From the IMG/VR virus record IMGVR_UViG_3300005537_000001, positions 304,055-368,054 of that record: 64,000 nt of DNA. One strand, 5' to 3'. The notes beneath the pieces were generated by a model. That model was not told where the DNA came from. It was given only the letters and a program-made list of their open reading frames with translations, and ran no database searches. Below, piece by piece: positions 34,299 through 62,693 of this stretch; the first letter of the stretch is position 1; every line of letters starts with the position of its first letter. The position numbers and the translations under genes are program-made.

Positions 34299-34327
34299 TT
34301 TACATTGGAGACAATACTGTGTATAAT
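34299..34327 (+). promoter_or_regulatory. Sigma70-type early/middle promoter
   Basis: gTTTACA-17 bp-TATAAT with TGTG before the -10 (T4 early-like). Confidence 0.8.
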
Positions 34328-34368: not shown

Positions 34369-35088
34369 TTGACAAAAATAAAACGCGAAAAAAGCACTAG
34401 TACTAAGGGCCATTACGTCACAAATGGAGTACTTCTTCCAGCTGTAATTGAAGCTAAAGGTCTCGGAAAGGTTACCGATAAGCTTATTCGGATGATCACG
34501 ATGATCGCCGAGCGGTATTCCAGGAAGGCCAATTTTGTTGGGTATTCGTTTCGCGAGGACATGGTCTCCGCCGCGGTAATGAACCTGTGCAACAACGCGC
34601 TTAAATTCAATCCTGAGAAGTCATCCAACCCCTTCTCATTCTACACGACTGCTATCCATAACTCATTCCTGCAGTACATGGCAGATGAGAAGAAGCACCG
34701 CAACATCCGCGACGCGCTTCTGATTGACGCTGGCTCCAACCCCTCCTTTAACTTCATGAACGGTGGCGTCGACAAGACGGAAGAAGTTGAGATACGAGAA
34801 TCGGATGAGATAATCATTCTAGACCAGAAGGAAATGTCTCCGGAGGATCTCGTTGTTGATCGGACTCCGGATGTCGTTGAATCACCAGTTCCAGCAAAAT
34901 CGCGTCATCCCAAGTGGGCTGCTCGTGAGCCAGGCCCAGTCATTACCTACAAGCCAAGCCAGTATACGGTTGATCCAATTACCAACAAGGTAACGATCAA
35001 TCCAATTCCAGAGCCGGTTGAAAAGAAAAAAGCTAAATCTGCTCCCAAGAAAAAGAAAGCTGTTAAGAAACCAGCTAAGAAGAAATAA
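34369..35088 (+). CDS. Late-transcription sigma factor, T4 gp55-like, with Lys-rich C-terminal tail
   Basis: HYV.N..L; IAE.YSRK.NF.GYSFREDM; KFNPEKSSNPF.FYT...HNSFL.....EKK; TTG start with AGGAG SD. Confidence 0.9.
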   Translation: MTKIKREKSTSTKGHYVTNGVLLPAVIEAKGLGKVTDKLIRMITMIAERYSRKANFVGYSFREDMVSAAVMNLCNNALKFNPEKSSNPFSFYTTAIHNSFLQYMADEKKHRNIRDALLIDAGSNPSFNFMNGGVDKTEEVEIRESDEIIILDQKEMSPEDLVVDRTPDVVESPVPAKSRHPKWAAREPGPVITYKPSQYTVDPITNKVTINPIPEPVEKKKAKSAPKKKKAVKKPAKKK

Positions 35089-38564: not shown

Positions 38565-38572
38565 CATAAATA
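38565..38572 (+). promoter_or_regulatory. Late promoter CATAAATA, 4 nt before the endonuclease ATG
   Basis: CCCATAAATAATTAATG. Confidence 0.7.
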
Positions 38573-38576
38573 ATTA

Positions 38577-39320
38577 ATGGGCGGTATCTATTTTATTACA
38601 TGTAGCGTAAATGGAAAAATCTATGTTGGATCCGCTAAGGATTTGCATACTCGATGGGCTGAACATGTATCTCTTCTTAATCTACAGAAGCACTTCAATA
38701 GGAATCTTCAAAGAGCATGGTTGAAGTATGATAAAGATTCATTCACATATCGAATCCATGAACAGCTTGGTGAATACAATAAGAAGTTTTTCTTTGAAAG
38801 AGAAAACTTTTGGATGGATAAGCTAAGAGCTGAAGGAAAGCGATTATTCAACATAGCTAGAGCTCAGGGTGGCTGGGGTGAAGAAACAAAACTTCGTGTA
38901 ATGGAGATAGGCGCAAAGATAGGTGCCACACTTAGAAAAATGTATAATGCTATGTCTGATGAAGAGCGTAAGCAAAAATATGGGCATCGAAAAGATATCC
39001 CGTTATCTGAGGCACATAAAGTTCACCTAAGGAATTTTTGGAAAGATAAGCCAAAATCTGAAACTCATAAAGCAAATATGCGGATTGGTCAGCGGGAAAA
39101 TGTTTCTCCGGAAAGAAAGAAACAACGGAAAAAGAATATGTCGATAGTTGGGAAGAGTAGAAGAGGCTCAATCCCATCAAATGCGAAACCAATACTTTTT
39201 AGAGGTGTTGAATACTCATCAGCCCCAGAATGTAAAAGAAAAACTGGGTTCACAATGCATCAAATATTATTAGAAGTATATGGACCAAATTATAGAAAAA
39301 CCAAAAAAGAAGCGGCTTAA
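38577..39320 (+). mobile_element. Free-standing GIY-YIG homing endonuclease with NUMOD3-like repeats
   Basis: GIYFI......KIYVGS....RW..H...L....H.N..LQ.AW.KY; SE.HK repeats; AT-rich. Confidence 0.9.
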
Positions 39321-40544: not shown

Positions 40545-41047
40545 TAGAAATAAAAGCGCCAAATAGAGTCCAAGGACATTACAATTCCTGGCTGAAAATT
40601 TTTCTTGCCGGATCAATTGAGATGGGTAAGGCAGAAGCGTGGCAAGCTCGAGTAGCGGCGGACATGAAAGATTATCATGTTGTTCTTCTCAATCCAAGAC
40701 GCGATGATTGGGACAACAGCTGGGTGCAGTGCATTGAAAATGCCCAATTTAACGAACAGGTAACTTGGGAACAGGATCAAATTGCTGATGCTGACATAGT
40801 TATTTTCTATTTCGATCCAAAAACGATGTCTCCGATTACCCTGATGGAGCTTGGATTCACTTTAGGCAAAGGCTGCCAGAGCGTTATCGTGTGCTGCCCA
40901 GAGGGATATGAACGGAAGGGTAACGTGGATATCATGTGCGCCAGAGCTCCGAAAAATTACGTAACTCTCGTAGAAACATACGACGATCTCATCAAATCAC
41001 TAAAAGACCATCTAAAGTATGCTGACCTTCCATCCGCTGGATGTTGA
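40541..41047 (+). CDS. Nucleoside 2-deoxyribosyltransferase-like protein
   Basis: IFLAGSI....A..WQ; NPRR.DW; QV.WE...I..AD; SPITL.ELG; VCCP.GY.RKGNV. Confidence 0.85.
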   Translation: MIEIKAPNRVQGHYNSWLKIFLAGSIEMGKAEAWQARVAADMKDYHVVLLNPRRDDWDNSWVQCIENAQFNEQVTWEQDQIADADIVIFYFDPKTMSPITLMELGFTLGKGCQSVIVCCPEGYERKGNVDIMCARAPKNYVTLVETYDDLIKSLKDHLKYADLPSAGC

Positions 41048-42296
41048 TCGCGAGCTAGACAGATCTAATCCTCTCTTCGTTGGTAACTTTTTCGACCTAA
41101 AGGGTATGTGGTGGAGGAAGCGGAAGCAGCGTCAGGGGTTGATCATATCGGTTGCCGTCGCGTGGTATCGCATCATGAAGAGCAATCCGGCTGCGGCGGG
41201 GTTTGTCGAGAAAGAAACGCTCATAACCAACCTTACCAATCAAGTCAAGGATGCCAGAGTAATCCTTGATAAATTTTTCAACGTAACGAAGATCGGCTTC
41301 AACTTCAACAATGGTAATAAAAGCCCTTCAACCATAACGCCGAAGCGACTTGGGAAGCGGATGCTAACCGCCATCAAGGAAATTCTCAAGGAAATTTATT
41401 TTTGCCCAGGCGCTCAACCAGTAGACGAAGCGCTTACAAAAAGCTACGTCCACGTGCAGAAAAATGCGAGTCACATTCTAGCTCGACTGAAGGAAGAAAA
41501 TCGTGAGGACCTCATTCCTCCGGTATCCTGGATACTGAGACAGGACTCTCCCATCACCTTTTACTTTAGGGCGAGCGGCGCCTTGCAGCAGCGCGACACG
41601 TCAGTGTGGCCGGTGCGCGCCATCGAGATGTGGCCAGGCTGGCTGCGCAAGGCGTTGTTCGGCACCACTGTAGATATTGAAAACGCGTATTCACAATTTC
41701 TAGTTGAGCATCTTAAGCTAAAATATGAAAACAGCCCGCTGCAGCTTAAGCTGCGGTATCCGGATGTCCTTCGTAGCGACAGCGATAAGCTAAACTTCAG
41801 GCTAGAGATCTTGCAGCTGCTCAAGCTTGAAAACAGCTACGATAACATGAAATACGTAAAGCGCATCTTGATGTCGTTGGCCAATGGTTCAAATGCATCC
41901 GCCGCGCTGATGACGAATGGAAGCGGTATGTCTGAAACCGTGGCGCTCGTCAATGAAGCCAATCCTAAGCTGCTTCCAACTGAACTCGCTGTTCTTGGAA
42001 ACCGGCTTTCCAGCATCGTGAAGCAGTTTAGGGCAGCTCGGCGTGATCTCTGCCTGTACCTCTTGAAGGAAAAACCGACGCGCGCAAATCAAAAGAAAAT
42101 ATTCAAGATGTACATGGCGTGGGAACGGACAGCTCGATACAAGATATGGAATGCAGCTGGACAGTCAGGCTTGCACCTCCACGACGGCGTTGATGGAATC
42201 GTAACGGACAAGTCAGACAGTGAGCTTACCAGCCATATAGCACGACAAACTTCGCTGCGCGTAAGCGTCAGCACACCACTAGCAGAGGCAGCATAA
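41019..42296 (+). CDS. Family-A-like (TV-Pol-type) nucleic acid polymerase, stand-alone
   Basis: Ordered motifs: WP..LR..LF, motif A VDIENAY, motif B VKRILMSLANG, Y..WE, motif C LHLHDG. Confidence 0.55.
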   Translation: MLTFHPLDVDRELDRSNPLFVGNFFDLKGMWWRKRKQRQGLIISVAVAWYRIMKSNPAAAGFVEKETLITNLTNQVKDARVILDKFFNVTKIGFNFNNGNKSPSTITPKRLGKRMLTAIKEILKEIYFCPGAQPVDEALTKSYVHVQKNASHILARLKEENREDLIPPVSWILRQDSPITFYFRASGALQQRDTSVWPVRAIEMWPGWLRKALFGTTVDIENAYSQFLVEHLKLKYENSPLQLKLRYPDVLRSDSDKLNFRLEILQLLKLENSYDNMKYVKRILMSLANGSNASAALMTNGSGMSETVALVNEANPKLLPTELAVLGNRLSSIVKQFRAARRDLCLYLLKEKPTRANQKKIFKMYMAWERTARYKIWNAAGQSGLHLHDGVDGIVTDKSDSELTSHIARQTSLRVSVSTPLAEAA

Positions 42297-42688
42297 TGAT
42301 AACTGTAAAACTTCAAGAGCTTAATAAGAAAAATCTCAATGGGCGCATCTATCCTACAGCCGTAGTAGAAAAAGCGATTGAAAGCGCTAAGGAGCGTATC
42401 GAAAACGGTAATTTTTGGGGAACTCTTGGTGTACCGCAAGGTCCATCAATTCCACTTGACTTGATATCGCATAGAGTGCTTGCGCTAAGAATCGAGGGTG
42501 ACTATTTGGTCGGCGATGTAAAAATTTTAGATACGCCCATGGCTCGAACGTATCAGGAGATAGAAGAAAGTAAGCTATATTCTGTCACGTGGCGCCCGAT
42601 GGGTACAGGAAAGGTAGATAATGATGGTGTTATAACAGATTATAACATCATGGGAATAACAGCAATTCCTGCAACTGACGCAGCTTAA
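42296..42688 (+). CDS. Prohead-protease (gp21) paralogue lacking the catalytic His and Ser
   Basis: Aligns to 49241-49858: KNLNGRIYP, I.L..[IV]SH, G..[KR]IL.TP, GTG.V...G; GELNHP becomes GTLGVP and GVSSRG becomes TWRPMG. Confidence 0.75.
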   Translation: MITVKLQELNKKNLNGRIYPTAVVEKAIESAKERIENGNFWGTLGVPQGPSIPLDLISHRVLALRIEGDYLVGDVKILDTPMARTYQEIEESKLYSVTWRPMGTGKVDNDGVITDYNIMGITAIPATDAA

Positions 42689-42720
42689 AAATATGGGCTA
42701 CCTAGGTAGCCCATATTTTT
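42687..42720. terminator. Bidirectional terminator, perfect 34-bp palindrome
   Basis: AAAAATATGGGCTACCTAGGTAGCCCATATTTTT between convergent genes. Confidence 0.85.
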
Positions 42721-42750
42721 GTTCCCCGTCTGAGTGTTTGAGGTCAGGGG

Positions 42751-43887: not shown

Positions 43888-46788
43888 ATGGCAAGATTAG
43901 ATCCCTCTCAGCAATCTTTATTTGACGCTCTAACCAAGGCGTGGGGTCGAGGTCCAGGTGATTCCGGACAAGGTGGTGGTTCAGCGTCTATCGGCGTTAC
44001 AGAATTTGTAAAGGCCGTTAAAAATTCCAAAGACAAGCTTGAAAAGCTTTCTACATCGATAGAGAAGCTGCTGGTTGAAAACGGCGATCAAGAGGATGCG
44101 GTGGAAAAGGCAACCGCCGTCCTAATCAAATCAACCCAATCATTTGGCGATCTTGACGCCGAGGTGCGAGAGCTACTTGGCAAGAGCCTACCGCAGGCGC
44201 GCGCGTATATCGAGAGCGTTTCACGGGCCAGCAAGGATCTTACTACCGGTCTTGGAAAAACAATCCGCAACCAATCGTTATTTGGTGCCGCGCTTCTAGA
44301 AAGTCACGCTGAGGTACAGCGCGGCACGCTAGCATATTCAAACATGCTTGGTAACATGTATGATGCAGCAAATGGTCTAAGCGAAGGTCTTCTGCGTCAG
44401 GCAAACTTGTGGGATGAAAATTCGAATTCGATAAGAAAAAATCTTGATCCACAGGATTTTGCTAGACTTCACGTTGCGATTGGTCAAGCTCAAACTGCCG
44501 TAGTTGAAAATTTGGGCGGCATCGAGGGTATGGGAAAACTATCAGCCCTCTCGGCGCTTAGTCAAGAACAATTCATCAATACTACCAGCGCGAACAGCGA
44601 GGCCGGTAAAAAGCTTCAATCGCAGCTGATCGCAGCGGCCCTTCAGCTTGAAGCGCTTGGGCAACATTTGGAGATACCTGGTGTTGGCGGTGCTACTGAA
44701 AAGGTCACGCTAACTCAGCATGGGCAAGTTAATCAAGCTGCCATAGATGCTCTGCAGGGAGATGCTGGTAAGCTGCAGGCGCTGACCCAAGCTCTTCTCA
44801 AGAATGTAGCTGAAAACAACGCCGCAAGCAGGAAATTCGCTGAAATAGCAAAAAATTCAAGCACGCTCGTAGGTGGTTTACTTTCTCACATAACAAGCAT
44901 CGGATCCCATTTAACTGGTTTAGAAGTTGCTGCTGAATTTGCAAAGCGTGGACTATTCTTGCTTGGCGATACCGCGACAATTAAGAAATCTTTCGACCTG
45001 ATGAAAGAAGGAGTGATGGGGGCGGTCAAGCAGATCGCCGACTTCAACAATGCCGGCGTCCCAGCTTCGTTCAAAAATGTTACGCTGGAATCATTCAAGC
45101 TGGGTATGTCCTTCTCAGAAACCGTTGAGTTCATGCAACAAAACAAACGGCAGATCGCGCTGTTCGGTGGTAGCTTTGACAGCTTGACCGATAACTATAA
45201 GGCAACCTTCCAAAAATTTGGCATAACGATGAAGCAGGGCGCTGAGGTAGTTGGCCCAGCATTTGAAGCTGCCATCGCCACCGGGATAAATGTCAAGAGC
45301 GGTGATCAAGTTAACAAGTTTACGGATTCACTACTTTCATCATTTAGCGATCTGCGCGGTGCCGTCAACGTTACGGCTGGAGAATACGCTAAGCAGACAG
45401 CCGCCCTCATCGCCTCATCGGAAGTTCAAGGCAACATCTTGGGCTTGGATAAAGAAGCATCAATCCAGCGCGTCAAGGATATCTTTCAACAGCAAAAATA
45501 CTATGTGTCTCAGGGGTTATCCCTGGAGGCAGCTAACGATCTTATCAAGGCCCAAAACGCTCAGAAGAATGAAGCTGTAAAGGATCAACTTGCCAATGCT
45601 GCAAAGTTGGCTCTCGGCGCGCAAATCGCCGGACTCAACGGTCAACAGGTAGCCCAGATACAAAGACTGTATCTCAAGGGCGCCGCTAGAACTAAGGAAG
45701 AAAATGTCCAGTTTGATAAGCTGAAACAGCAAAGAGCCGCGGGGTTAGCTGGTAGAACCGCGCGGGCCAACGCTACCGGTGATATTGGTACAATTCTCGG
45801 CACTCAAGTTGGAAATCAATTTGTAGAAAATCTCACTGGTTCGGCCGCCGCCGGTCAGCAGGCAGCCAACACTGAGGCTGCATCGGCTAAAGCTGGAAAT
45901 CAACTCACGGATGATCAGCTAGCTCAGGCTGCTGCAGCAGCAAAAGGCAGCGAGTCTATCGCTGGATTAGGTAACGTTGCTAATACCTTAACATCTGTAT
46001 TTTCGAATCCCCTAACCAAGTCAATATTTGGCGCTACCGGTGGCCTGATTGGTCTCGCGCTTCAATCGCTGTTAACAGCTCGTTCCCTTGGACAAATCGG
46101 TGGAAGCTTTGGCAACCTCGGTGGTCTATTCAAGAAGCTGTTCGGTGGAGGTGCGGCTACAGCTGCGGTAGAAGGAGCTGAAAAGGTTGTTGAATCATCT
46201 GGCGCCAAGGCGGCAGAAAAGGTAGCTGAAAAAGGTGGACTAAAGGTCGCCGAGAAGATCGGTGCAAAAACCATCGGTAAATCCCTCCTAAAAGCTATCC
46301 CAGGTATTGGTTTGATCGCCGCCCTTGGCTTCGGCGCCCAGAGAGCCTTCGGCGGAGATTTCAAGGGAGCAGGTTTGGAAGTCGCTTCGGGTGCCGCGAG
46401 CCTTATTCCAGGAGTCGGCACCGCAGCATCTCTAGCTATTGACGCTGGTATAGCAGGTCGAGACTTCGTTAACGCGAGTGAGGCAGCTGGCAAACCTCCA
46501 ATCCCTGGTCAGCCTGGCGCAGGTGAGACTGCAGTAAATACTACAGGTACGACTGGTGAAGCATCTCCAACCGATAAATCATGGGTTGTTCAGGATCCTA
46601 CGTCTCATGATTATTTGAGCGCGATCGCCGACAGCATGATTCAAGCCGTAAAGCTTCTTCAGATGATATCCGATAACGGTAATCCTGAAGCTAGCAACGT
46701 GGTCGTAGAGCGGCTTAAGGCTGGTGGCGTCAAGAATATACCAACCGCTACCTCATATACGACTGGCAGGCAGATGGCTGCAGCTTAA
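43888..46788 (+). CDS. Tape-measure-like protein (966 aa)
   Basis: Ala/Gly/Gln-rich and helical; C-terminal K.IPG.G...G..R...GD..GA.L...G.AS.IPG.GT motif; next to the gp26-like chaperone. Confidence 0.65.
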   Translation: MARLDPSQQSLFDALTKAWGRGPGDSGQGGGSASIGVTEFVKAVKNSKDKLEKLSTSIEKLLVENGDQEDAVEKATAVLIKSTQSFGDLDAEVRELLGKSLPQARAYIESVSRASKDLTTGLGKTIRNQSLFGAALLESHAEVQRGTLAYSNMLGNMYDAANGLSEGLLRQANLWDENSNSIRKNLDPQDFARLHVAIGQAQTAVVENLGGIEGMGKLSALSALSQEQFINTTSANSEAGKKLQSQLIAAALQLEALGQHLEIPGVGGATEKVTLTQHGQVNQAAIDALQGDAGKLQALTQALLKNVAENNAASRKFAEIAKNSSTLVGGLLSHITSIGSHLTGLEVAAEFAKRGLFLLGDTATIKKSFDLMKEGVMGAVKQIADFNNAGVPASFKNVTLESFKLGMSFSETVEFMQQNKRQIALFGGSFDSLTDNYKATFQKFGITMKQGAEVVGPAFEAAIATGINVKSGDQVNKFTDSLLSSFSDLRGAVNVTAGEYAKQTAALIASSEVQGNILGLDKEASIQRVKDIFQQQKYYVSQGLSLEAANDLIKAQNAQKNEAVKDQLANAAKLALGAQIAGLNGQQVAQIQRLYLKGAARTKEENVQFDKLKQQRAAGLAGRTARANATGDIGTILGTQVGNQFVENLTGSAAAGQQAANTEAASAKAGNQLTDDQLAQAAAAAKGSESIAGLGNVANTLTSVFSNPLTKSIFGATGGLIGLALQSLLTARSLGQIGGSFGNLGGLFKKLFGGGAATAAVEGAEKVVESSGAKAAEKVAEKGGLKVAEKIGAKTIGKSLLKAIPGIGLIAALGFGAQRAFGGDFKGAGLEVASGAASLIPGVGTAASLAIDAGIAGRDFVNASEAAGKPPIPGQPGAGETAVNTTGTTGEASPTDKSWVVQDPTSHDYLSAIADSMIQAVKLLQMISDNGNPEASNVVVERLKAGGVKNIPTATSYTTGRQMAAA

Positions 46789-46813: not shown

Positions 46814-48448
46814 ATGGCATCTTGGGTAGATTATTGGCGAATCGTCACTCCCGCGTCGCGCAAGGCACAATATCAAAATCCTAACATCAACCTAGATGAT
46901 GGTATGGATCTCAATACAGCTGGGTACGCTTCATTCTCCACCGTAGCTTGGTTCTCGAACCTTCTCAAGGGAGCCACGGCCCGCCTGCAGCGCTACAAGC
47001 AGTACGATGCCATGGATTACGGTGACGTTGGTAGGGCCTTAGACATTATTTCTGAAGAACTTTCTAACGAGGACAAGCGCACCGGATTGCCGTTCATCAT
47101 TGATTATCAGACAGAAGAAAATCAACAGATTTCTGAAACTACGGTAACGACAGTTCGTGCCGCCCTGCGCCATTGGTCAAAATTTCACTCACTTGAAAAG
47201 CGCGTGTTTAACGTGGCGCGAGTGCTGTGCAAGTATGGTGATTGTTTTTTCCGCAAAACATCAGATACAAAGAAATGGGAATACGTAGATCCAACCCGCG
47301 TGATAGGTATTGAAATTAACGCTGAGGGTGAAAAGAAAGCATATCACATTCGTCCCTCCAGCTTCTCGAACTCAGTTGCCAGCGCCAAGGGAACAGCAAA
47401 GGGCGTAAGCTCATCGATGGAGTCAGTCGAAATTTCTCCAGCTTCAGCTATAATCCACTTCACGCTGTCGGACGACATGGGCGAGAGCGCGCCGTTTGGA
47501 TTGTCAATTCTTCAGGCAGCGTTTAAGGATTTCCAAAAGCTGACGATGCTGGAAGATGCGGCAATTATCTACCGCATAGTGAGAGCTCCAGAGCGCCGAG
47601 TATTCTACATTGACGTAGGCAACATGCCGCCGCAGCGCGTTAAGCAGTACATTGAGCAGGTGCGAAACGACATTAGGCAAAAGCGCCAGCCCAATACCGC
47701 CAACGCGAATCAAACTGATTCTCAGTACAACGCCGAAAGCATTCAAGAAGATTATTTCTTCCCAACGACCGCGAGTGGTCGCGGTAGCCGCGTTGAAACC
47801 CTCCCCGGCGGTGCAACGTGGGAAATTCCAGAGCTTGATTACTTCCTCAAGAAGGTGTTTAGAGCTCTCCGAGTACCTTCGTCGTACATGATTGGACAGG
47901 AGGCAGCCCCGCCGGGTGCGCAGTTCAACGACGGAAAGGTTGGCGTCGCTTACATGGAAGAGCGCATCTTCGCGAACTTCGTAATTCGCCTGCAGCAGTG
48001 CGTTGAGACAACCTTCGATGAGCAGTTTAAGACGTATCTCAAGGTAACTGGGATCAGCGTTGACCCTGAACTTTTCAAGCTTACGCTACCAGAACCACAG
48101 AACTTCGCTCTGTATCGTCAAGCCGCGCTTGACACCGATCTCATCGCGTCGTTCAAGGCGATTGAGGAAACCGGTTATCTTTCCAAGAGAATGATGATTG
48201 AGCGCTTCCTCGGACTTACCAAGGATGACATCGCGGCAAATGAGGTACAGATTAGACAGGAACGTGGCATCAAGGATGGTCTAAACATAGATGTCATACA
48301 GCAGATCTATGACCCAGCCGTTTATGAAAATCGCGACAAGCTTAAGGTAGATGATTCCGGTGAAGCCCCGCCTCCAGAGGCTGGCGGTGAAGAGACACCA
48401 GCTCCAGAAGCCGGAGGCGGTGAAACTCCAGAGACACCAGCAGCTTAA
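46814..48448 (+). CDS. Portal vertex protein gp20
   Basis: RY.QYD.MD; PFG.SIL; LEDA.IIYRI.RAPERRVFYIDVGNMPP; EDYFFP; GRGSRVETLPGG; ALRVPSSY. Confidence 0.95.
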   Translation: MASWVDYWRIVTPASRKAQYQNPNINLDDGMDLNTAGYASFSTVAWFSNLLKGATARLQRYKQYDAMDYGDVGRALDIISEELSNEDKRTGLPFIIDYQTEENQQISETTVTTVRAALRHWSKFHSLEKRVFNVARVLCKYGDCFFRKTSDTKKWEYVDPTRVIGIEINAEGEKKAYHIRPSSFSNSVASAKGTAKGVSSSMESVEISPASAIIHFTLSDDMGESAPFGLSILQAAFKDFQKLTMLEDAAIIYRIVRAPERRVFYIDVGNMPPQRVKQYIEQVRNDIRQKRQPNTANANQTDSQYNAESIQEDYFFPTTASGRGSRVETLPGGATWEIPELDYFLKKVFRALRVPSSYMIGQEAAPPGAQFNDGKVGVAYMEERIFANFVIRLQQCVETTFDEQFKTYLKVTGISVDPELFKLTLPEPQNFALYRQAALDTDLIASFKAIEETGYLSKRMMIERFLGLTKDDIAANEVQIRQERGIKDGLNIDVIQQIYDPAVYENRDKLKVDDSGEAPPPEAGGEETPAPEAGGGETPETPAA

Positions 48449-49189: not shown

Positions 49190-49197
49190 CATAAATA
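49190..49197 (+). promoter_or_regulatory. Late promoter CATAAATA
   Basis: Intergenic, upstream of the prohead protease. Confidence 0.75.
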
Positions 49198-49240
49198 ATC
49201 TGTGAATTCAATGTGTTCAGGTTATCTGACGGGAGACTCT

Positions 49241-49858
49241 ATGTCAAAGCTTATTCCTCTGTATGAGTATTTCAACCCAGTTGAAGCTCAATTGGTTGAG
49301 TCTCGGGACGCGCAGAAGAATCTTTATCTAGCTGGTAGAATGATGGCGGGTGAGGCAAAGAACCTCAACAACCGCAGCTATCCAGTTACCGAAATTGCTA
49401 AGGCGGTTGGTCTCATCAACCAACGAATTAAGGAAGGTGCCTTCATCGCTGGTGAGCTGAATCACCCAGACAACCTTTCAATCGATCTAAAGAATGTTTC
49501 ACACATCATCATCGAAGCATGGATGGATGGAAACAACGCCGTCGGTAAGTGCAGAATTTTGAACACCCCATCTGGACAAATAGTTCAGAGCCTCATTGAG
49601 GGTGGAATGAAGCTTGGAGTTTCTTCGCGTGGAACTGGAAACGTAAACCACAACGGCATAGTTGAGGATTTTTCGTTCGTAACGCTCGACATCGTAGCCC
49701 AACCATCCGGTCCAGGCTGCTACCCAGATGTAGTTCGTGAAGGTTTGGAACAGCCAAAGATTCGCACCCTCGCCGAAATGGCGGTGGAAGATGTCAAGGC
49801 GCAAAAATTCTTGACGCGTGAAGTGTTCAAGTTCATCGCATCACTGACGAAGAAGTAA
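49241..49858 (+). CDS. Prohead core protease gp21
   Basis: N.N.R.YP, GELNHP (His), VSH.I, IL.TP.G, LGVSSRG.G (Ser), D.VA.PS; ATG 49241 has a GGGAG SD. Confidence 0.93.
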   Translation: MSKLIPLYEYFNPVEAQLVESRDAQKNLYLAGRMMAGEAKNLNNRSYPVTEIAKAVGLINQRIKEGAFIAGELNHPDNLSIDLKNVSHIIIEAWMDGNNAVGKCRILNTPSGQIVQSLIEGGMKLGVSSRGTGNVNHNGIVEDFSFVTLDIVAQPSGPGCYPDVVREGLEQPKIRTLAEMAVEDVKAQKFLTREVFKFIASLTKK

Positions 49859-52309: not shown

Positions 52310-52594
52310 GTGGATGAATCTCGCCTCAAGAGACTCGCTGGTATTTTAACCGAAGAGGCCGATAAGAAGGTAATTCCTATCGGCCTCCACTTCGGTCTTG
52401 GCGACGGAGGCAACATGCACAAGGCGGTCGACGCGCTGCTTGAAGCTGGAATTGAAGTGGACATGAATTATTCGATGGGTGTTTATTATTTCAACTTCAA
52501 GAGTGAAAAGCTTGCCGATGAAGCTCACAGGATTGTAGCTAAAGTTATCGATAAGAAAAAAGAGCAGAAGTGGAGCGAAAATGCTAGTACGTGA
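52310..52594 (+). CDS. Small protein with LAG tag; paralogue of the next gene
   Basis: GTG start; RLKRLAGILTE; HFG...KA..AL..A.[IV]E.D....G..YF.F. Confidence 0.7.
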   Translation: MDESRLKRLAGILTEEADKKVIPIGLHFGLGDGGNMHKAVDALLEAGIEVDMNYSMGVYYFNFKSEKLADEAHRIVAKVIDKKKEQKWSENAST

Positions 52595-52850
52595 ACTGTT
52601 GGAAGCAAAAATGACCAAACCAGATTATAAGAACTGGTATGGTAATATACATTTCGGTTTTGAACATAAGCCAAACGCTACCAAGGCTGCAGCAGCTCTG
52701 AAGAAAGCTGACGTTGAATTTGATAGCGATACTAACGGCGGCATCACCTATTTCTATTTTGATACCAAATCTGACATGAAGAAAGCTATCAAGATTGTAA
52801 CCCCAGTTATTGATGCATCCAAGGAATCCGAATGGGGTTCATCCGAATAA
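52581..52850 (+). CDS. Small protein with class-I leader; paralogue of the previous gene
   Basis: MLVRELLE; same HFG...KA..AL..A.VE.D...G..YF.F...VID..KE..W core. Confidence 0.7.
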   Translation: MLVRELLEAKMTKPDYKNWYGNIHFGFEHKPNATKAAAALKKADVEFDSDTNGGITYFYFDTKSDMKKAIKIVTPVIDASKESEWGSSE

Positions 52851-53459: not shown

Positions 53460-53516
53460 ATTTCAGAACTCGCGCTGCAATCACATTGACGGCGCTATAA
53501 CAATAAGGAGACGACA

Positions 53517-53717
53517 ATGGCTGATACAAACGCTCTAAAGAGCATGTTGAACAACTTTATTAATGATAAGCCTGAAGAGGCTACTCTTGATCTTCATGGT
53601 TACTTGACAACAAAGATGAAGGACGTTGCGGGTATTAGCGTAGCTGATGAACCACTTGTGGATGACGACACCGTTCCAGAAGTTGACCCCGAAGCTACCC
53701 AAGAAGCTACAGAGTAA
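53517..53717 (+). CDS. Small acidic prohead core protein (gp67/gp68-like position)
   Basis: SD AAGGAG; acidic tail; KMKDVAGI motif; precedes the scaffold. Confidence 0.55.
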   Translation: MADTNALKSMLNNFINDKPEEATLDLHGYLTTKMKDVAGISVADEPLVDDDTVPEVDPEATQEATE

Positions 53718-53788
53718 GCCTGATAAGTTGAAAGCAGGTAAGTTGAGGCGCCAAAAGCGCCGGTTTTTAGCGAATTTTTCGTGTGGCC

Positions 53789-53796
53789 CATAAATA
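53789..53796 (+). promoter_or_regulatory. Late promoter CATAAATA for scaffold-MCP
   Basis: Intergenic, about 110 nt upstream of the scaffold start. Confidence 0.75.
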
Positions 53797-53905
53797 AAAT
53801 CGTACGTTTCACGTAGATTTGTAATATGCAAACGCGTAAGGTTCAAAGCCTTTAGAGACGAATAAAAATCAGTCTCTATCCCACCCTTTTATAGGAGTTA
53901 AACTG

Positions 53906-59726: not shown

Positions 59727-59729
59727 ATA
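59722..59729 (+). promoter_or_regulatory. Late promoter CATAAATA
   Basis: Overlaps the endolysin stop. Confidence 0.7.
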
Positions 59730-59750
59730 GAATATCAATTGGAGGCTTGA

Positions 59751-60032
59751 ATGCTTACGCGCGAATTGCTCAGTGAAAAGGTTGCACCGCTACCAGCTGG
59801 AATGTCCATTGAGGATTCATTCGTTGAGCTGCAGAAGCGGCTTGGTGCCGCCAAGGCAGCGTTTGGCATCATCAACAAGATCAAGGACAAGGAGCAGCGC
59901 AAGAAGCACTTTTCCTCCGTCACTGGAAACATGAACACGCTTCGAGCCCAGCTTTCAAGGCTTGACAAGCAGCTTAACGATTTTTACCGAGCCGAAAGAA
60001 GCTACGAGCGCGGTGAGCTTCACGCAGAATAA
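59751..60032 (+). CDS. Small helical protein with class-I leader MLTRELLSE
   Basis: GGAGG SD, late promoter. Confidence 0.7.
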   Translation: MLTRELLSEKVAPLPAGMSIEDSFVELQKRLGAAKAAFGIINKIKDKEQRKKHFSSVTGNMNTLRAQLSRLDKQLNDFYRAERSYERGELHAE

Positions 60033-60043
60033 CGGAGACAACC

Positions 60044-62389: not shown

Positions 62390-62438
62390 CCTGATTAAGA
62401 ACCTGGTAAATATAGCATGATCCACAGTAGGGCGTATC

Positions 62439-62693
62439 ATGCTATCAATCTTCAAGCGCAAACCAAAACAAATACAGGATAATCATATGGAATATTTCTC
62501 TCAAGAATTTCTCGATCAGCTTATCAACGAGCACAAGCTTGTTAACGCGTCAATTCACCAGCTTACAGACCGCTACAAGCAGTACGTTCAAGCTCACAGC
62601 CCAGATGCTCTTACCGCTGCCCTCACAACTCTCCGCGGCAAGAAGGTAGAGCTTGAGGCGAAGATAGATGTTTTATCGGAATATTTGAAATAA
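62439..62693 (+). CDS. Hypothetical coiled-coil protein (alternative start 62487)
   Basis: ORF track; GGTAAATA box at 62405-62412. Confidence 0.55.
   Translation: MLSIFKRKPKQIQDNHMEYFSQEFLDQLINEHKLVNASIHQLTDRYKQYVQAHSPDALTAALTTLRGKKVELEAKIDVLSEYLK

What the first reader, a model, noticed from the sequence alone, without database searches (positions are those of the whole stretch)
42296..42688. Catalytically dead prohead-protease paralogue at the end of the sigma70-driven block
Seen: colinear with gp21 (KNLNGRIYP vs KNLNNRSYP; ISHRV vs VSHII; ILDTP vs ILNTP; GTGKV vs GTGNV). The His motif GELNHP is replaced by GTLGVP, the Ser motif GVSSRG by TWRPMG, and the termini are shorter. Inference: a pseudo-protease that could restrain gp21 (functional analogue of T4 Inh), protect Glu-site cargo from premature cleavage, or act as a decoy for host sensors of phage proteases.
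Basis: partly seen in the sequence, partly recalled or inferred. Interest (0 to 1): 0.65.

Follow-up and report, generated by a model that had tools for sequence, protein, structure and literature searches.

The report
Dead stand-alone prohead-protease core protein
A 130-residue gene of a 368-kb jumbo phage encodes only the folded core of the capsid-maturation protease, with all three catalytic residues replaced. It belongs to a large, unnamed and fast-evolving family of such small proteins that jumbo phages carry among their early DNA-metabolism genes, and its function is still unknown.

Summary
ORF 42296..42688 (+) is a real, intact gene. Its product is 34% identical (E 3e-18) to the window's own gp21-type prohead protease (49241..49858). 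The AlphaFold model (pLDDT 95.5) superposes on T4 gp21 residues 39-172 (Z 16.3, rmsd 1.6 A). The T4 triad His85/Ser140/Asp168 is replaced by Val46/Arg100/Thr122, and gp21's N-terminal pro-segment and C-terminal tail are missing.

It is neither a pseudogene nor a recent in-genome duplicate. Three orthologues are all 130 aa, with pN 0.16-0.20 against pS 0.69-0.78. A profile search finds at least 120 clusters of 115-150-aa relatives. None of these has both His and Ser, and 71% carry Arg at the Ser position. True gp21s form a separate clade.

In 9 of 9 independent contexts the gene sits among replication, recombination or nucleotide-metabolism genes, not in the head module. Here it is the last gene of a block headed by a near-consensus sigma70 promoter, in a variable cargo slot before a strong terminator. 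It diverges much faster than gp21 (22-44% against 72-81% identity in the same genome pairs).

Function is inferred only. The likeliest reading is a cytoplasmic, non-cleaving binder built on the protease cleft. A co-fold with gp21 gave no verdict. A conceptual precedent exists (SPN3US gp117), so this is a new variant of a known kind.

The parts
42296..42688 (+). CDS of the 130-aa non-catalytic gp21-core protein (P0002). Val46 (42431-42433) stands at the His position, Arg100 (42593-42595) at the Ser position and Thr122 (42659-42661) at the Asp position.
42285..42288 (+). GAGG Shine-Dalgarno-like sequence 7 nt before the ATG. The ATG overlaps the upstream stop codon (TAATG), which suggests translational coupling.
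   Evidence: read from the sequence; the same 1-nt overlap is seen in L003/L004/L005
42686..42721 (.). Perfect 16-bp hairpin flanked by an A-run and a T-run. It looks like a bidirectional terminator between convergent genes and marks the end of the + strand block.
   Evidence: -22.2 kcal/mol, z -6.1, 0 of 200 shuffles fold as well
41019..42296 (+). Upstream 425-aa ORF of unknown function, conserved across the clade at 48-56% identity. It precedes the variable slot that holds the short gene.
34299..34327 (+). Sigma70-type promoter-like site TTTACA-17-TATAAT (11 of 12 matches) ahead of the gp55-like / gp47 / gp46 ... block that ends with the short gene.
49241..49858 (+). The phage's genuine gp21-type prohead protease with the His/Ser/Asp triad intact. 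The [C/G]ATAAATA late-type motif lies at 49190. The likely start is ATG 49241, because homologues are 203-206 aa.

Best explanation
What it is (shown): a stand-alone pseudo-protease. The gene encodes only the globular core of a T4-gp21-type capsid-maturation protease. It lacks the catalytic His/Ser/Asp, the N-terminal pro-segment that plugs gp21's active site, and the C-terminal tail. It belongs to a large, unnamed family of 115-150-aa phage proteins. In that family the catalytic Ser column is mostly Arg and the His column is hydrophobic, while the loops that form the protease cleft stay the most conserved parts.

How it most likely works (inferred): it is made as the last cistron of the early, sigma70-type gp55/gp47/gp46 operon, so independently of and probably before the late head genes. 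Lacking the tail, it probably stays in the cytoplasm rather than entering the prohead core. Under this reading it uses the remodelled cleft to bind a peptide segment without cutting it. The most probable targets belong to gp21's own pathway: gp21's termini, its Glu-site substrates, or host proteins that gp21 would otherwise cut. The effect would be to damp proteolysis outside the capsid during the long infection cycle of a jumbo phage. Its patchy presence in a variable cargo slot and its fast divergence mark it as an accessory, probably host-interaction, gene rather than a core assembly component.
For: Homology and fold:
- BLASTP E 3e-18; hhalign 99.5% against the window's gp21 and 97% against T4 gp21.
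- AF2 model with pLDDT 95.5.
- 5JBL is the top hit by Foldseek (E 3.6e-8) and by VIA-align (Z 16.3, rmsd 1.6 A over 125 residues, covering gp21 39-172).

Triad lost: V46/R100/T122. Of 124 short relatives, 0 have both His and Ser, and 88 have Arg at the Ser column.

Selection: the orthologues are intact at 130 aa, with pN 0.16-0.20 against pS 0.69-0.78.

Cleft loops conserved family-wide: DxPNxNGRxY, GxxG, SH, LxTPxG, (F/W)RxxGxG.

Context:
- In 9 of 9 contexts the gene lies among replication or nucleotide-metabolism genes.
- The sigma70-like promoter is at 34299. No late [C/G]ATAAATA motif lies between 38573 and the gene, whereas such motifs precede gp21 and other structural genes.
- A terminator follows the gene.

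Accessory character: the slot is variable, and the gene shows 22-44% identity where gp21 shows 72-81%.

Literature:
- The gp21 N-terminus blocks the active site (PMC9958956).
- The C-terminus of a related protease is implicated in prohead targeting (PMC7411985).
- Free gp21 activity triggers CBASS (PMC12991175).
Against: - No binding partner has been shown. The co-fold with gp21 scored ipSAE 0.09, which counts as no verdict.
- gp21's invariant Arg in SSRG is not conserved in the short family (A/R/V/S at that column), so recognition of P1-Glu may not be retained.
- The steady neighbourhood of DNA and nucleotide-metabolism genes could mean a job unrelated to head maturation.
- A late-type motif at 38565, 3.7 kb upstream on the same strand, could also drive late transcription, so the timing is not settled.
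- I had no model coordinates, so I could not map the conserved residues in 3D.
Confidence: 0.35

Rival explanations
1. The fold has been recruited for a job unrelated to capsid proteolysis. On this view the remodelled cleft (Arg plus a hydrophobic residue) binds a host protein or a small acidic ligand. The protein would then serve host take-over, anti-defence or nucleotide/DNA metabolism, like its neighbours.
For: - All 9 contexts are replication or nucleotide-metabolism neighbourhoods: gp46/47, PDDEXK, deoxyribosyltransferase, PRPP synthetase, ThyA, Tmk, gp32, UvsX, RNR, NAMPT/Sir2/Nudix/PhoH.
- Presence is patchy and the slot is variable.
- Divergence is fast and the family is acidic, with median pI about 5.1.
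- gp21's invariant SSRG Arg is not kept.
Against: - The most conserved positions are exactly the loops shared with gp21.
- Wherever a contig reaches the head module, the genome also carries a genuine gp21.
- No consistent partner gene sits next to it.
Confidence: 0.27
2. It is a dominant-negative subunit. On this view the core domain co-assembles with gp21 protomers, which form a pentamer in T4, and holds the zymogen inactive in the cytoplasm. This would make it a functional analogue of T4 Inh.
For: The protein has the same core fold as gp21. gp21 is pentameric (PMC9958956). Early-type expression would put it in place before gp21 appears.
Against: - The co-fold gave no support (0.09, no verdict).
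- If only an oligomer interface mattered, the former active-site loops would be free to drift, yet they are the best conserved part and show a family-specific Arg.
- It shares only 34% identity with its own gp21, and it diverges about three times faster than gp21. That is hard to reconcile with a co-evolving interface.
- It is not homologous to Inh.
Confidence: 0.15
3. It is still an enzyme that uses another active site, for example the conserved Ser58-His59 pair or Arg100.
For: Ser58 and His59 are conserved in 84% and 89% of the family, and Arg100 in 71%.
Against: - The same SH pair is nearly invariant in true gp21s of this clade and absent from active T4 gp21 (AA at that position). It is therefore shared and structural rather than a new catalytic centre.
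- Adjacent residues rarely form a dyad.
- No other conserved nucleophile exists; position 98 is A/V/D/G.
Confidence: 0.05
4. It is a decaying duplicate (pseudogene) or a chance ORF.
For: The catalytic residues are lost and the termini are truncated.
Against: - There are three intact 130-aa orthologues with saturated synonymous sites but pN of only 0.16-0.20.
- At least 120 clusters of full-length relatives exist.
- The model is a compact, complete domain with pLDDT 95.5.
- The RBS and translational coupling are conserved.
Confidence: 0.02

Closest known systems
T4 gp21 prohead protease (MEROPS S77, Pfam PF03420, PDB 5JBL) and the window's own gp21 (49241..49858)
   Same: It has the same core fold (Z 16.3, rmsd 1.6 A over gp21 residues 39-172). 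It shares the cleft-loop motifs NxNxRxYP, GxxG/N-x-P, (SH), LxTPxG and GxG. Identity to the window's gp21 is 34%.
   Different: - His85, Ser140 and Asp168 are replaced by Val, Arg and Thr.
- There is no N-terminal pro-segment and no C-terminal tail.
- It scores below the Pfam cut-off.
- It is encoded in the early-type replication/recombination block, not between portal and scaffold.
- It has no late-promoter motif of its own.
- It evolves about three times faster than gp21.
SPN3US gp117, the 'cryptic', truncated, presumably inactive paralogue of the phiKZ-type prohead protease gp245 (PMC5694885)
   Same: The concept is the same: a jumbo phage carries, far from its head protease gene, a short, diverged protease-fold protein that lacks the aligned catalytic His.
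   Different: It is a different lineage (S80 type). hhalign of the family profile against gp117 finds nothing (probability 0.1%). gp117 is reported to keep the Ser and Asp; the window protein keeps none of the three.
Serratia phage BF gp116, Erwinia phage pEa_SNUABM_12 gp116 and Yersinia phage fHe-Yen9-04 g109 (Eneladusvirus jumbo phages)
   Same: These are members or near-members of the same short family in cultured phages: hhalign 99.6% for BF gp116 and BFVD TM 0.93 for the Yersinia phage protein. They are 144-154 aa and are encoded among NAD and nucleotide-metabolism genes, with a separate full-length gp21 elsewhere in the genome.
   Different: BF gp116 still has the SSRG serine and the Asp and lacks only the His. 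Databases label these proteins 'capsid maturation protease' or 'prohead core scaffolding protein', which the missing His makes doubtful.
T4 Inh (inhibitor of the gp21 protease)
   Different: There is no sequence relationship (hhalign probability 0.5%). Inh is a 226-aa minor head protein encoded next to hoc.

Membership tests
Peptidase S77 (T4 gp21 prohead protease) | Herpesvirus-assemblin-like protease core fold | tested here: met
   Foldseek gives 5JBL at E 3.6e-8 and TMq 0.76. VIA-align gives Z 16.3, rmsd 1.6 A over 125 residues.
Peptidase S77 (T4 gp21 prohead protease) | Pfam PF03420 score at or above the gathering cut-off (27 bits) | tested here: not met
   16.7 bits, E 0.005.
Peptidase S77 (T4 gp21 prohead protease) | Catalytic His (T4 His85, GELNHP) | tested here: not met
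   Val46 in the window protein and Ile/Val in the orthologues.
Peptidase S77 (T4 gp21 prohead protease) | Catalytic Ser (T4 Ser140, GVSSRG) | tested here: not met
   Arg100 by hhalign and MAFFT, or Thr98 by BLASTP with Ala in the orthologues.
Peptidase S77 (T4 gp21 prohead protease) | Third triad residue, Asp (T4 Asp168 by alignment) | tested here: not met
   Thr122. The triad is described as His/Ser/Asp in PMC5694885.
Peptidase S77 (T4 gp21 prohead protease) | N-terminal pro-segment and C-terminal tail that are removed on activation or used for prohead incorporation | tested here: not met
   The protein spans only gp21 residues 39-172, and the alignment shows both extensions missing.
Peptidase S77 (T4 gp21 prohead protease) | Gene in the head module (portal - protease - scaffold - major capsid protein) behind a late promoter | tested here: not met
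   The gene lies 6.5 kb upstream of gp21, at the end of the gp55/47/46 block. No [C/G]ATAAATA motif lies within 3.7 kb upstream.
Peptidase S77 (T4 gp21 prohead protease) | Proteolytic activity after Glu (L/I-x-E) | not testable with these tools
   This needs a biochemical assay.
Unnamed family of short gp21-core proteins (defined here, alignment A3) | Length of 115-150 aa covering only the protease core, end to end | tested here: met
   The protein is 130 aa. The best 150 representatives are mostly 115-140 aa and are aligned over their full length.
Unnamed family of short gp21-core proteins (defined here, alignment A3) | His column hydrophobic, Ser column Arg within (F/W/Y)-R-x-x-G-x-G, and no member with both His and Ser | tested here: met
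   The window protein reads GTLGV46P and W99-R100-PMGTG.
Unnamed family of short gp21-core proteins (defined here, alignment A3) | Encoded outside the head module, with a separate full-length gp21 in the same genome | tested here: met
   Window; L008-L011, L014, L104-L106 and phage BF.
T4 Inh (protease inhibitor) | Sequence homology to Inh | tested here: not met
   hhalign probability 0.5%.
SPN3US gp117-type cryptic protease | Sequence homology to gp117 | tested here: not met
   hhalign probability 0.1%. This was a single-sequence target, so a remote link through the fold is not excluded (BFVD lists short phiKZ-like proteins at TM about 0.6).

The most novel reading that the evidence does not exclude
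The family is a phage counter-measure against protease-sensing immunity. Under this reading it is an early-made, non-cutting copy of the prohead protease cleft. It would occupy the Glu-containing 'tripwire' loops of host sensors, such as the CBASS CD-NTases recently reported to be switched on by gp21 cleavage, or it would mop up stray gp21. Late capsid maturation would then not set off abortive infection. That would make it the first anti-defence protein derived from the phage's own trigger enzyme.
Probability: 0.12. Interest if true: 0.85.

Novelty: new variant of a known kind. Interest (0 to 1): 0.55.

Why it matters
Pseudo-enzymes that keep a binding cleft but lose catalysis are common regulators in cells, but they are hardly described in phages. 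This work defines a large family of at least 120 clusters at 50% identity, found mostly in jumbo and huge phages and present in cultured Serratia, Erwinia and Yersinia phages. In databases its members are either unnamed or mislabelled as 'capsid maturation protease' or 'scaffolding protein'.

The family's conserved Ser-to-Arg swap, its early-gene location and its rapid turnover suggest a regulatory or host-directed role linked to the capsid protease. That question has become timely because free gp21 activity was recently reported to trigger CBASS immunity. At the least, the result corrects annotation and gives a clean, foldable, testable candidate.

Tried and rejected
- **Co-fold of gp21 with the short protein.** ipSAE was 0.09 and the controls were not run. 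The tool's verdict is 'no answer', so this is not evidence either way.
- **T4 gp68 and T4 Inh as relatives.** hhalign probabilities were 0.2% and 0.5%. Both rejected.
- **SPN3US gp117 as a member of the same family.** Probability 0.1%. Rejected at the sequence level.
- **Recent duplication of the phage's own gp21.** Rejected for three reasons. The protein is as similar to cyanophage gp21s (37-38%) as to its own (34%). It clusters with other short proteins in the tree. RsoM2USA lacks it.
- **Pseudogene.** Rejected on pN/pS.
- **Canonical T4 late promoter TATAAATA.** There are 0 matches. The phage instead uses [C/G]ATAAATA.
- **IMG/VR scans.**
  - The single-protein scan found nothing.
  - The full family alignment had no stretch usable for patterns.
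  - The 12-sequence alignment returned 80 loci that all proved to be genuine gp21 genes.
- **NCBIfam and PDB sequence searches** on the short protein and the 425-aa neighbour gave nothing.
- **One script call returned no answer** and was repeated.
- **Virion mass-spectrometry table of the Erwinia Eneladusvirus paper.** It lists one 23.2-kDa 'prohead core scaffolding protein' with a single spectrum. I could not tell which of the two genes this is, so it was not used.
Full report
**1. The observation**

Window 42296..42688 (+) is an open frame of 130 codons. Its ATG overlaps the TAA of the preceding 425-codon ORF by one base (TAATG), and GAGG lies 7 nt upstream. The window also holds a T4-type head module:
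- portal at 46814..48448 (Pfam Portal_T4, 1.5e-82);
- a genuine gp21-type protease at 49202/49241..49858 (Peptidase_S77, 2.2e-23; phrog_207, 8.9e-53).

BLASTP of the short protein against that protease gives 34% identity over 119 residues, E 3e-18. The short protein hits phrog_207 at 2.4e-19. It stays below Pfam's cut-off for Peptidase_S77, at 16.7 against 27 bits.

**2. Catalytic residues**

The T4 gp21 crystal construct 5JBL reads GELNAP and GVASRG where the window's gp21 reads GELNHP and GVSSRG. This is the H85A/S140A inactive mutant also used in PMC12991175. PMC5694885 describes the T4 triad as His/Ser/Asp. In my alignment, which includes T4 gp21 taken from NC_000866, the triad columns are His85, Ser140 and Asp168.

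The short protein has Val46, Arg100 and Thr122 at these columns. BLASTP alone places Thr98 opposite the Ser, but the two orthologues have Ala there. No nucleophile is conserved under either alignment.

**3. Fold**

An AlphaFold2 model built on a 124-sequence family alignment has mean pLDDT 95.5 and pTM 0.86, and it forms one compact domain.
- Foldseek against the PDB puts 5JBL first (E 3.6e-8, TMq 0.76). Herpesvirus proteases follow far behind.
- The Foldseek-independent search gives 5JBL Z 16.3, rmsd 1.6 A over 125 residues, with model residues 1-126 on gp21 residues 39-172. Herpesvirus proteases come next at Z 8.7 and 6.7.

The protein is thus the complete protease core and nothing else. The missing N-terminal segment is the part that blocks the active site in the pre-active T4 enzyme (PMC9958956). 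The C-terminal region has been implicated in prohead incorporation for the related SPN3US protease (PMC7411985).

**4. Not a pseudogene**

The word-index search found two orthologues (68% and 65% identity, both 130 aa) on three metagenomic contigs with the same gene order. Pairwise Nei-Gojobori counts give pS 0.69-0.78, which is saturated, against pN 0.16-0.20. This is strong purifying selection.

**5. A large family, not a private paralogue**

A profile of the three orthologues was searched against 1.84 billion representatives. It returned 2602 hits at E <= 1e-3 and 313 at E <= 1e-10. The best 150 are overwhelmingly proteins of 115-140 aa aligned end to end.

Among the 124 relatives of 150 aa or less:
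- none has both His and Ser;
- the Ser column is Arg in 88;
- the His column is Met/Tyr/Val/Ile/Phe;
- the Asp column is Asp in 47 and Asn in 27.

The best conserved positions are DxPNxNGRxY, GxxG, Ser58-His59, LxTPxG and (F/W)-R-x-x-G-x-G. These are the loops shared with gp21. The SH pair is also nearly invariant in this clade's true gp21s and absent from T4 gp21, so it is not a new active site. gp21's invariant Arg of the SSRG motif is not kept in the short family. Instead an Arg sits two residues earlier, at the Ser column.

In a maximum-likelihood tree, 17 of 18 genuine gp21s form one clade (SH-aLRT 89). The window protein groups with its two orthologues (support 100) inside the short proteins and not with its own gp21. 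Deep branching within the short family is unresolved.

The sources give these proteins no name beyond 'hypothetical protein'. Several cultured Eneladusvirus jumbo phages have 144-154-aa members or near-members: Serratia phage BF gp116, the Erwinia pEa_SNUABM phages and Yersinia phage fHe-Yen9-04. These are annotated 'capsid maturation protease' or 'prohead core scaffolding protein'. BF gp116 keeps the Ser and the Asp but not the His. A 595-kb uncultured huge phage (LR756511) has a member with GELGMP/FRSRG.

**6. Genome and context**

The window is the last 64 kb of a 368,054-bp viral record with direct terminal repeats. Its nearest cultured relative is Ralstonia jumbo phage RsoM2USA (portal 49% identity). 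RsoM2USA has only one gp21-like gene and an unannotated gap at the equivalent place. The window's own genome has exactly two matches to the family profile.

The short gene is the last gene of a + strand block. In order, the block holds:
- a gp55-like sigma factor (weak Sigma70_r2 match);
- gp47-like Metallophos;
- gp46-like SMC_N;
- a GIY-YIG endonuclease;
- PDDEXK_15;
- small ORFs;
- a nucleoside deoxyribosyltransferase;
- the 425-aa ORF;
- the short gene.

A near-consensus sigma70-type site (TTTACA-17-TATAAT, 11 of 12 matches) precedes the block. A perfect 16-bp hairpin with flanking A and T runs follows the short gene (-22.2 kcal/mol, z -6.1).

The phage's late-type motif appears to be [C/G]ATAAATA. 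CATAAATA occurs 11 times against 2.4 expected (0 of 100 shuffles reach this). Most occurrences lie just upstream of structural genes, including gp21. None lies between 38573 and the short gene. One at 38565, directly before the GIY-YIG gene, could add late read-through, so the timing is probable but not proven.

**7. Variable slot, non-head neighbourhoods and fast divergence**

In related 70-340-kb contigs the position after the conserved 418-429-aa ORF holds different things:
- the short gene (window, L003-L005, L010);
- a histidine phosphatase (L013);
- nothing (L014, L016);
- other small ORFs (L008, L015).

In L008/L009 and L014 the short gene sits instead right after gp46. In more distant phages it lies:
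- after PRPP synthetase among dUTPase, ThyA and ligase genes (L011);
- among ThyA, helicase and Tmk (L104);
- among gp32, UvsX and RNR (L105);
- among PTH2, NADAR and RNA ligase (L106);
- among NAMPT, Sir2, Nudix and PhoH in phage BF.

That makes nine independent contexts, and none of them is in the portal-protease-scaffold-capsid module.

For the same genome pairs, identity is 72-81% for gp21, 64-75% for the portal, 48-56% for the 425-aa neighbour and only 22-44% for the short protein.

**8. Interpretation**

Shown: this is a selected, folded, non-catalytic, stand-alone protease core. It belongs to a widespread family, is encoded with early-type genes and is an accessory gene.

Inferred: it is not packaged, because it has no tail. 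It uses the remodelled cleft to bind rather than cut. Conservation is concentrated on the cleft loops, and the family-specific Arg argues for a binding site rather than a mere oligomer interface.

The target is unknown. gp21's own pathway is the most economical guess. It is topical because free gp21 activity alone activates a CBASS CD-NTase through cleavage of a Glu-containing loop (PMC12991175). Three points weigh against a simple 'binds Glu sites' model: the loss of gp21's invariant SSRG arginine, the metabolic neighbourhoods, and the lack of any support from the co-fold (ipSAE 0.09, 'no answer').

T4 Inh and T4 gp68 are unrelated. The published precedent is SPN3US gp117, a truncated and presumably inactive paralogue of the phiKZ-type protease (PMC5694885). 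It is conceptually the same but not detectably homologous. BFVD does show many 124-150-aa proteins with this fold in phiKZ-like phages at lower TM-scores. Stand-alone protease-fold proteins may therefore be a general feature of jumbo phages.

**9. Verdict**

'Dead and maintained' is correct. 'A paralogue of this phage's gp21' is too narrow. The function remains open.
- Novelty: a new variant of a known kind.
- Interest is moderate, and higher if the anti-defence reading holds.

Noticed in passing
window 41019-42296 (+): A 425-aa ORF with no Pfam, PHROG, NCBIfam or PDB sequence match. It is conserved at 48-56% identity across the jumbo-phage clade and always follows the deoxyribosyltransferase gene. 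It is translationally coupled to the short gene here and in L003/L004/L010.
   Followed up: partly
window 42689-42750 and the equivalent positions in L008, L010, L013-L016: The position between the 425-aa ORF and the convergent baseplate-hub gene is a variable cargo slot. It holds the short protease-like gene, a His_Phos_1 phosphatase, other small ORFs or nothing. This looks like an accessory-gene hotspot.
   Followed up: partly
window, e.g. 8638, 10718, 22421, 27952, 34264 (-); 43829, 48452, 49190, 53789, 60727, 63387 (+): [C/G]ATAAATA is enriched (CATAAATA 11 against 2.4 expected) and lies mostly just upstream of structural genes in the right orientation. It is probably this phage's late promoter, one base off T4's TATAAATA, which is absent from the window.
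   Followed up: partly
window 38577-39320 (+): A GIY-YIG homing-endonuclease-like gene lies between the gp46-like gene and PDDEXK_15, with a CATAAATA motif only 5 nt before its ATG. It may be a mobile insertion, and it is a possible source of late read-through into the downstream genes.
   Followed up: no
window 49202 vs 49241: The longest gp21 ORF starts at GTG 49202 (218 aa), but more than 100 homologues are 203-206 aa long. The real start is probably ATG 49241 (MSKLIPLYEY...).
   Followed up: yes
window 34369-35088 (+): The first gene of the block has a weak Sigma70_r2 match (E 0.002) and sits next to the gp47/gp46 homologues, as gene 55 does in T4. It is probably the late sigma factor.
   Followed up: no
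window 43888-46788 (+): A 966-aa Ala/Gly-rich protein lies between the baseplate hub and the portal. Its C-terminal part matches phage peptidase and endolysin PHROGs (phrog_23178, phrog_34252). It is probably a tail-associated lysin or tape-measure-like protein.
   Followed up: no
window 1441-26906 (-): Three giant ORFs of 2298, 2972 and 1402 aa lie in a row on the minus strand. They were not examined.
   Followed up: no
L016 7010-9901: In a related 233-kb contig the portal gene is 963 aa long and carries an intein (a PF14890 Intein_splicing match between two Portal_T4 matches).
   Followed up: no
Serratia phage BF NC_041917.1 61464-61928 (L097 5947-6411), and Erwinia pEa_SNUABM_12 gp116: These 154-aa family members lie among NAD-metabolism genes and are annotated 'capsid maturation protease' or 'prohead core scaffolding protein', although the catalytic His is missing. 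This is probably a propagated mis-annotation.
   Followed up: partly
family alignment A3, C-termini: Of 124 short proteins, 65 end in Ala (-AA 28, -GA 19, -PA 15), often as (D/E)AA-COOH as in the window protein (ATDAA). The stretch resembles gp21's segment just after the core (T4 SAPDAW). Whether it is a degradation signal is unknown.
   Followed up: no
window 52310-52850, 53460-53905, 59727-60043, 62390-62693: These 'gaps' between the larger head-region ORFs contain small open frames of under 100 aa. Two in 52310-52850 look like paralogues of each other (…YYFNF… and …TYFYF…). They were not analysed.
   Followed up: no
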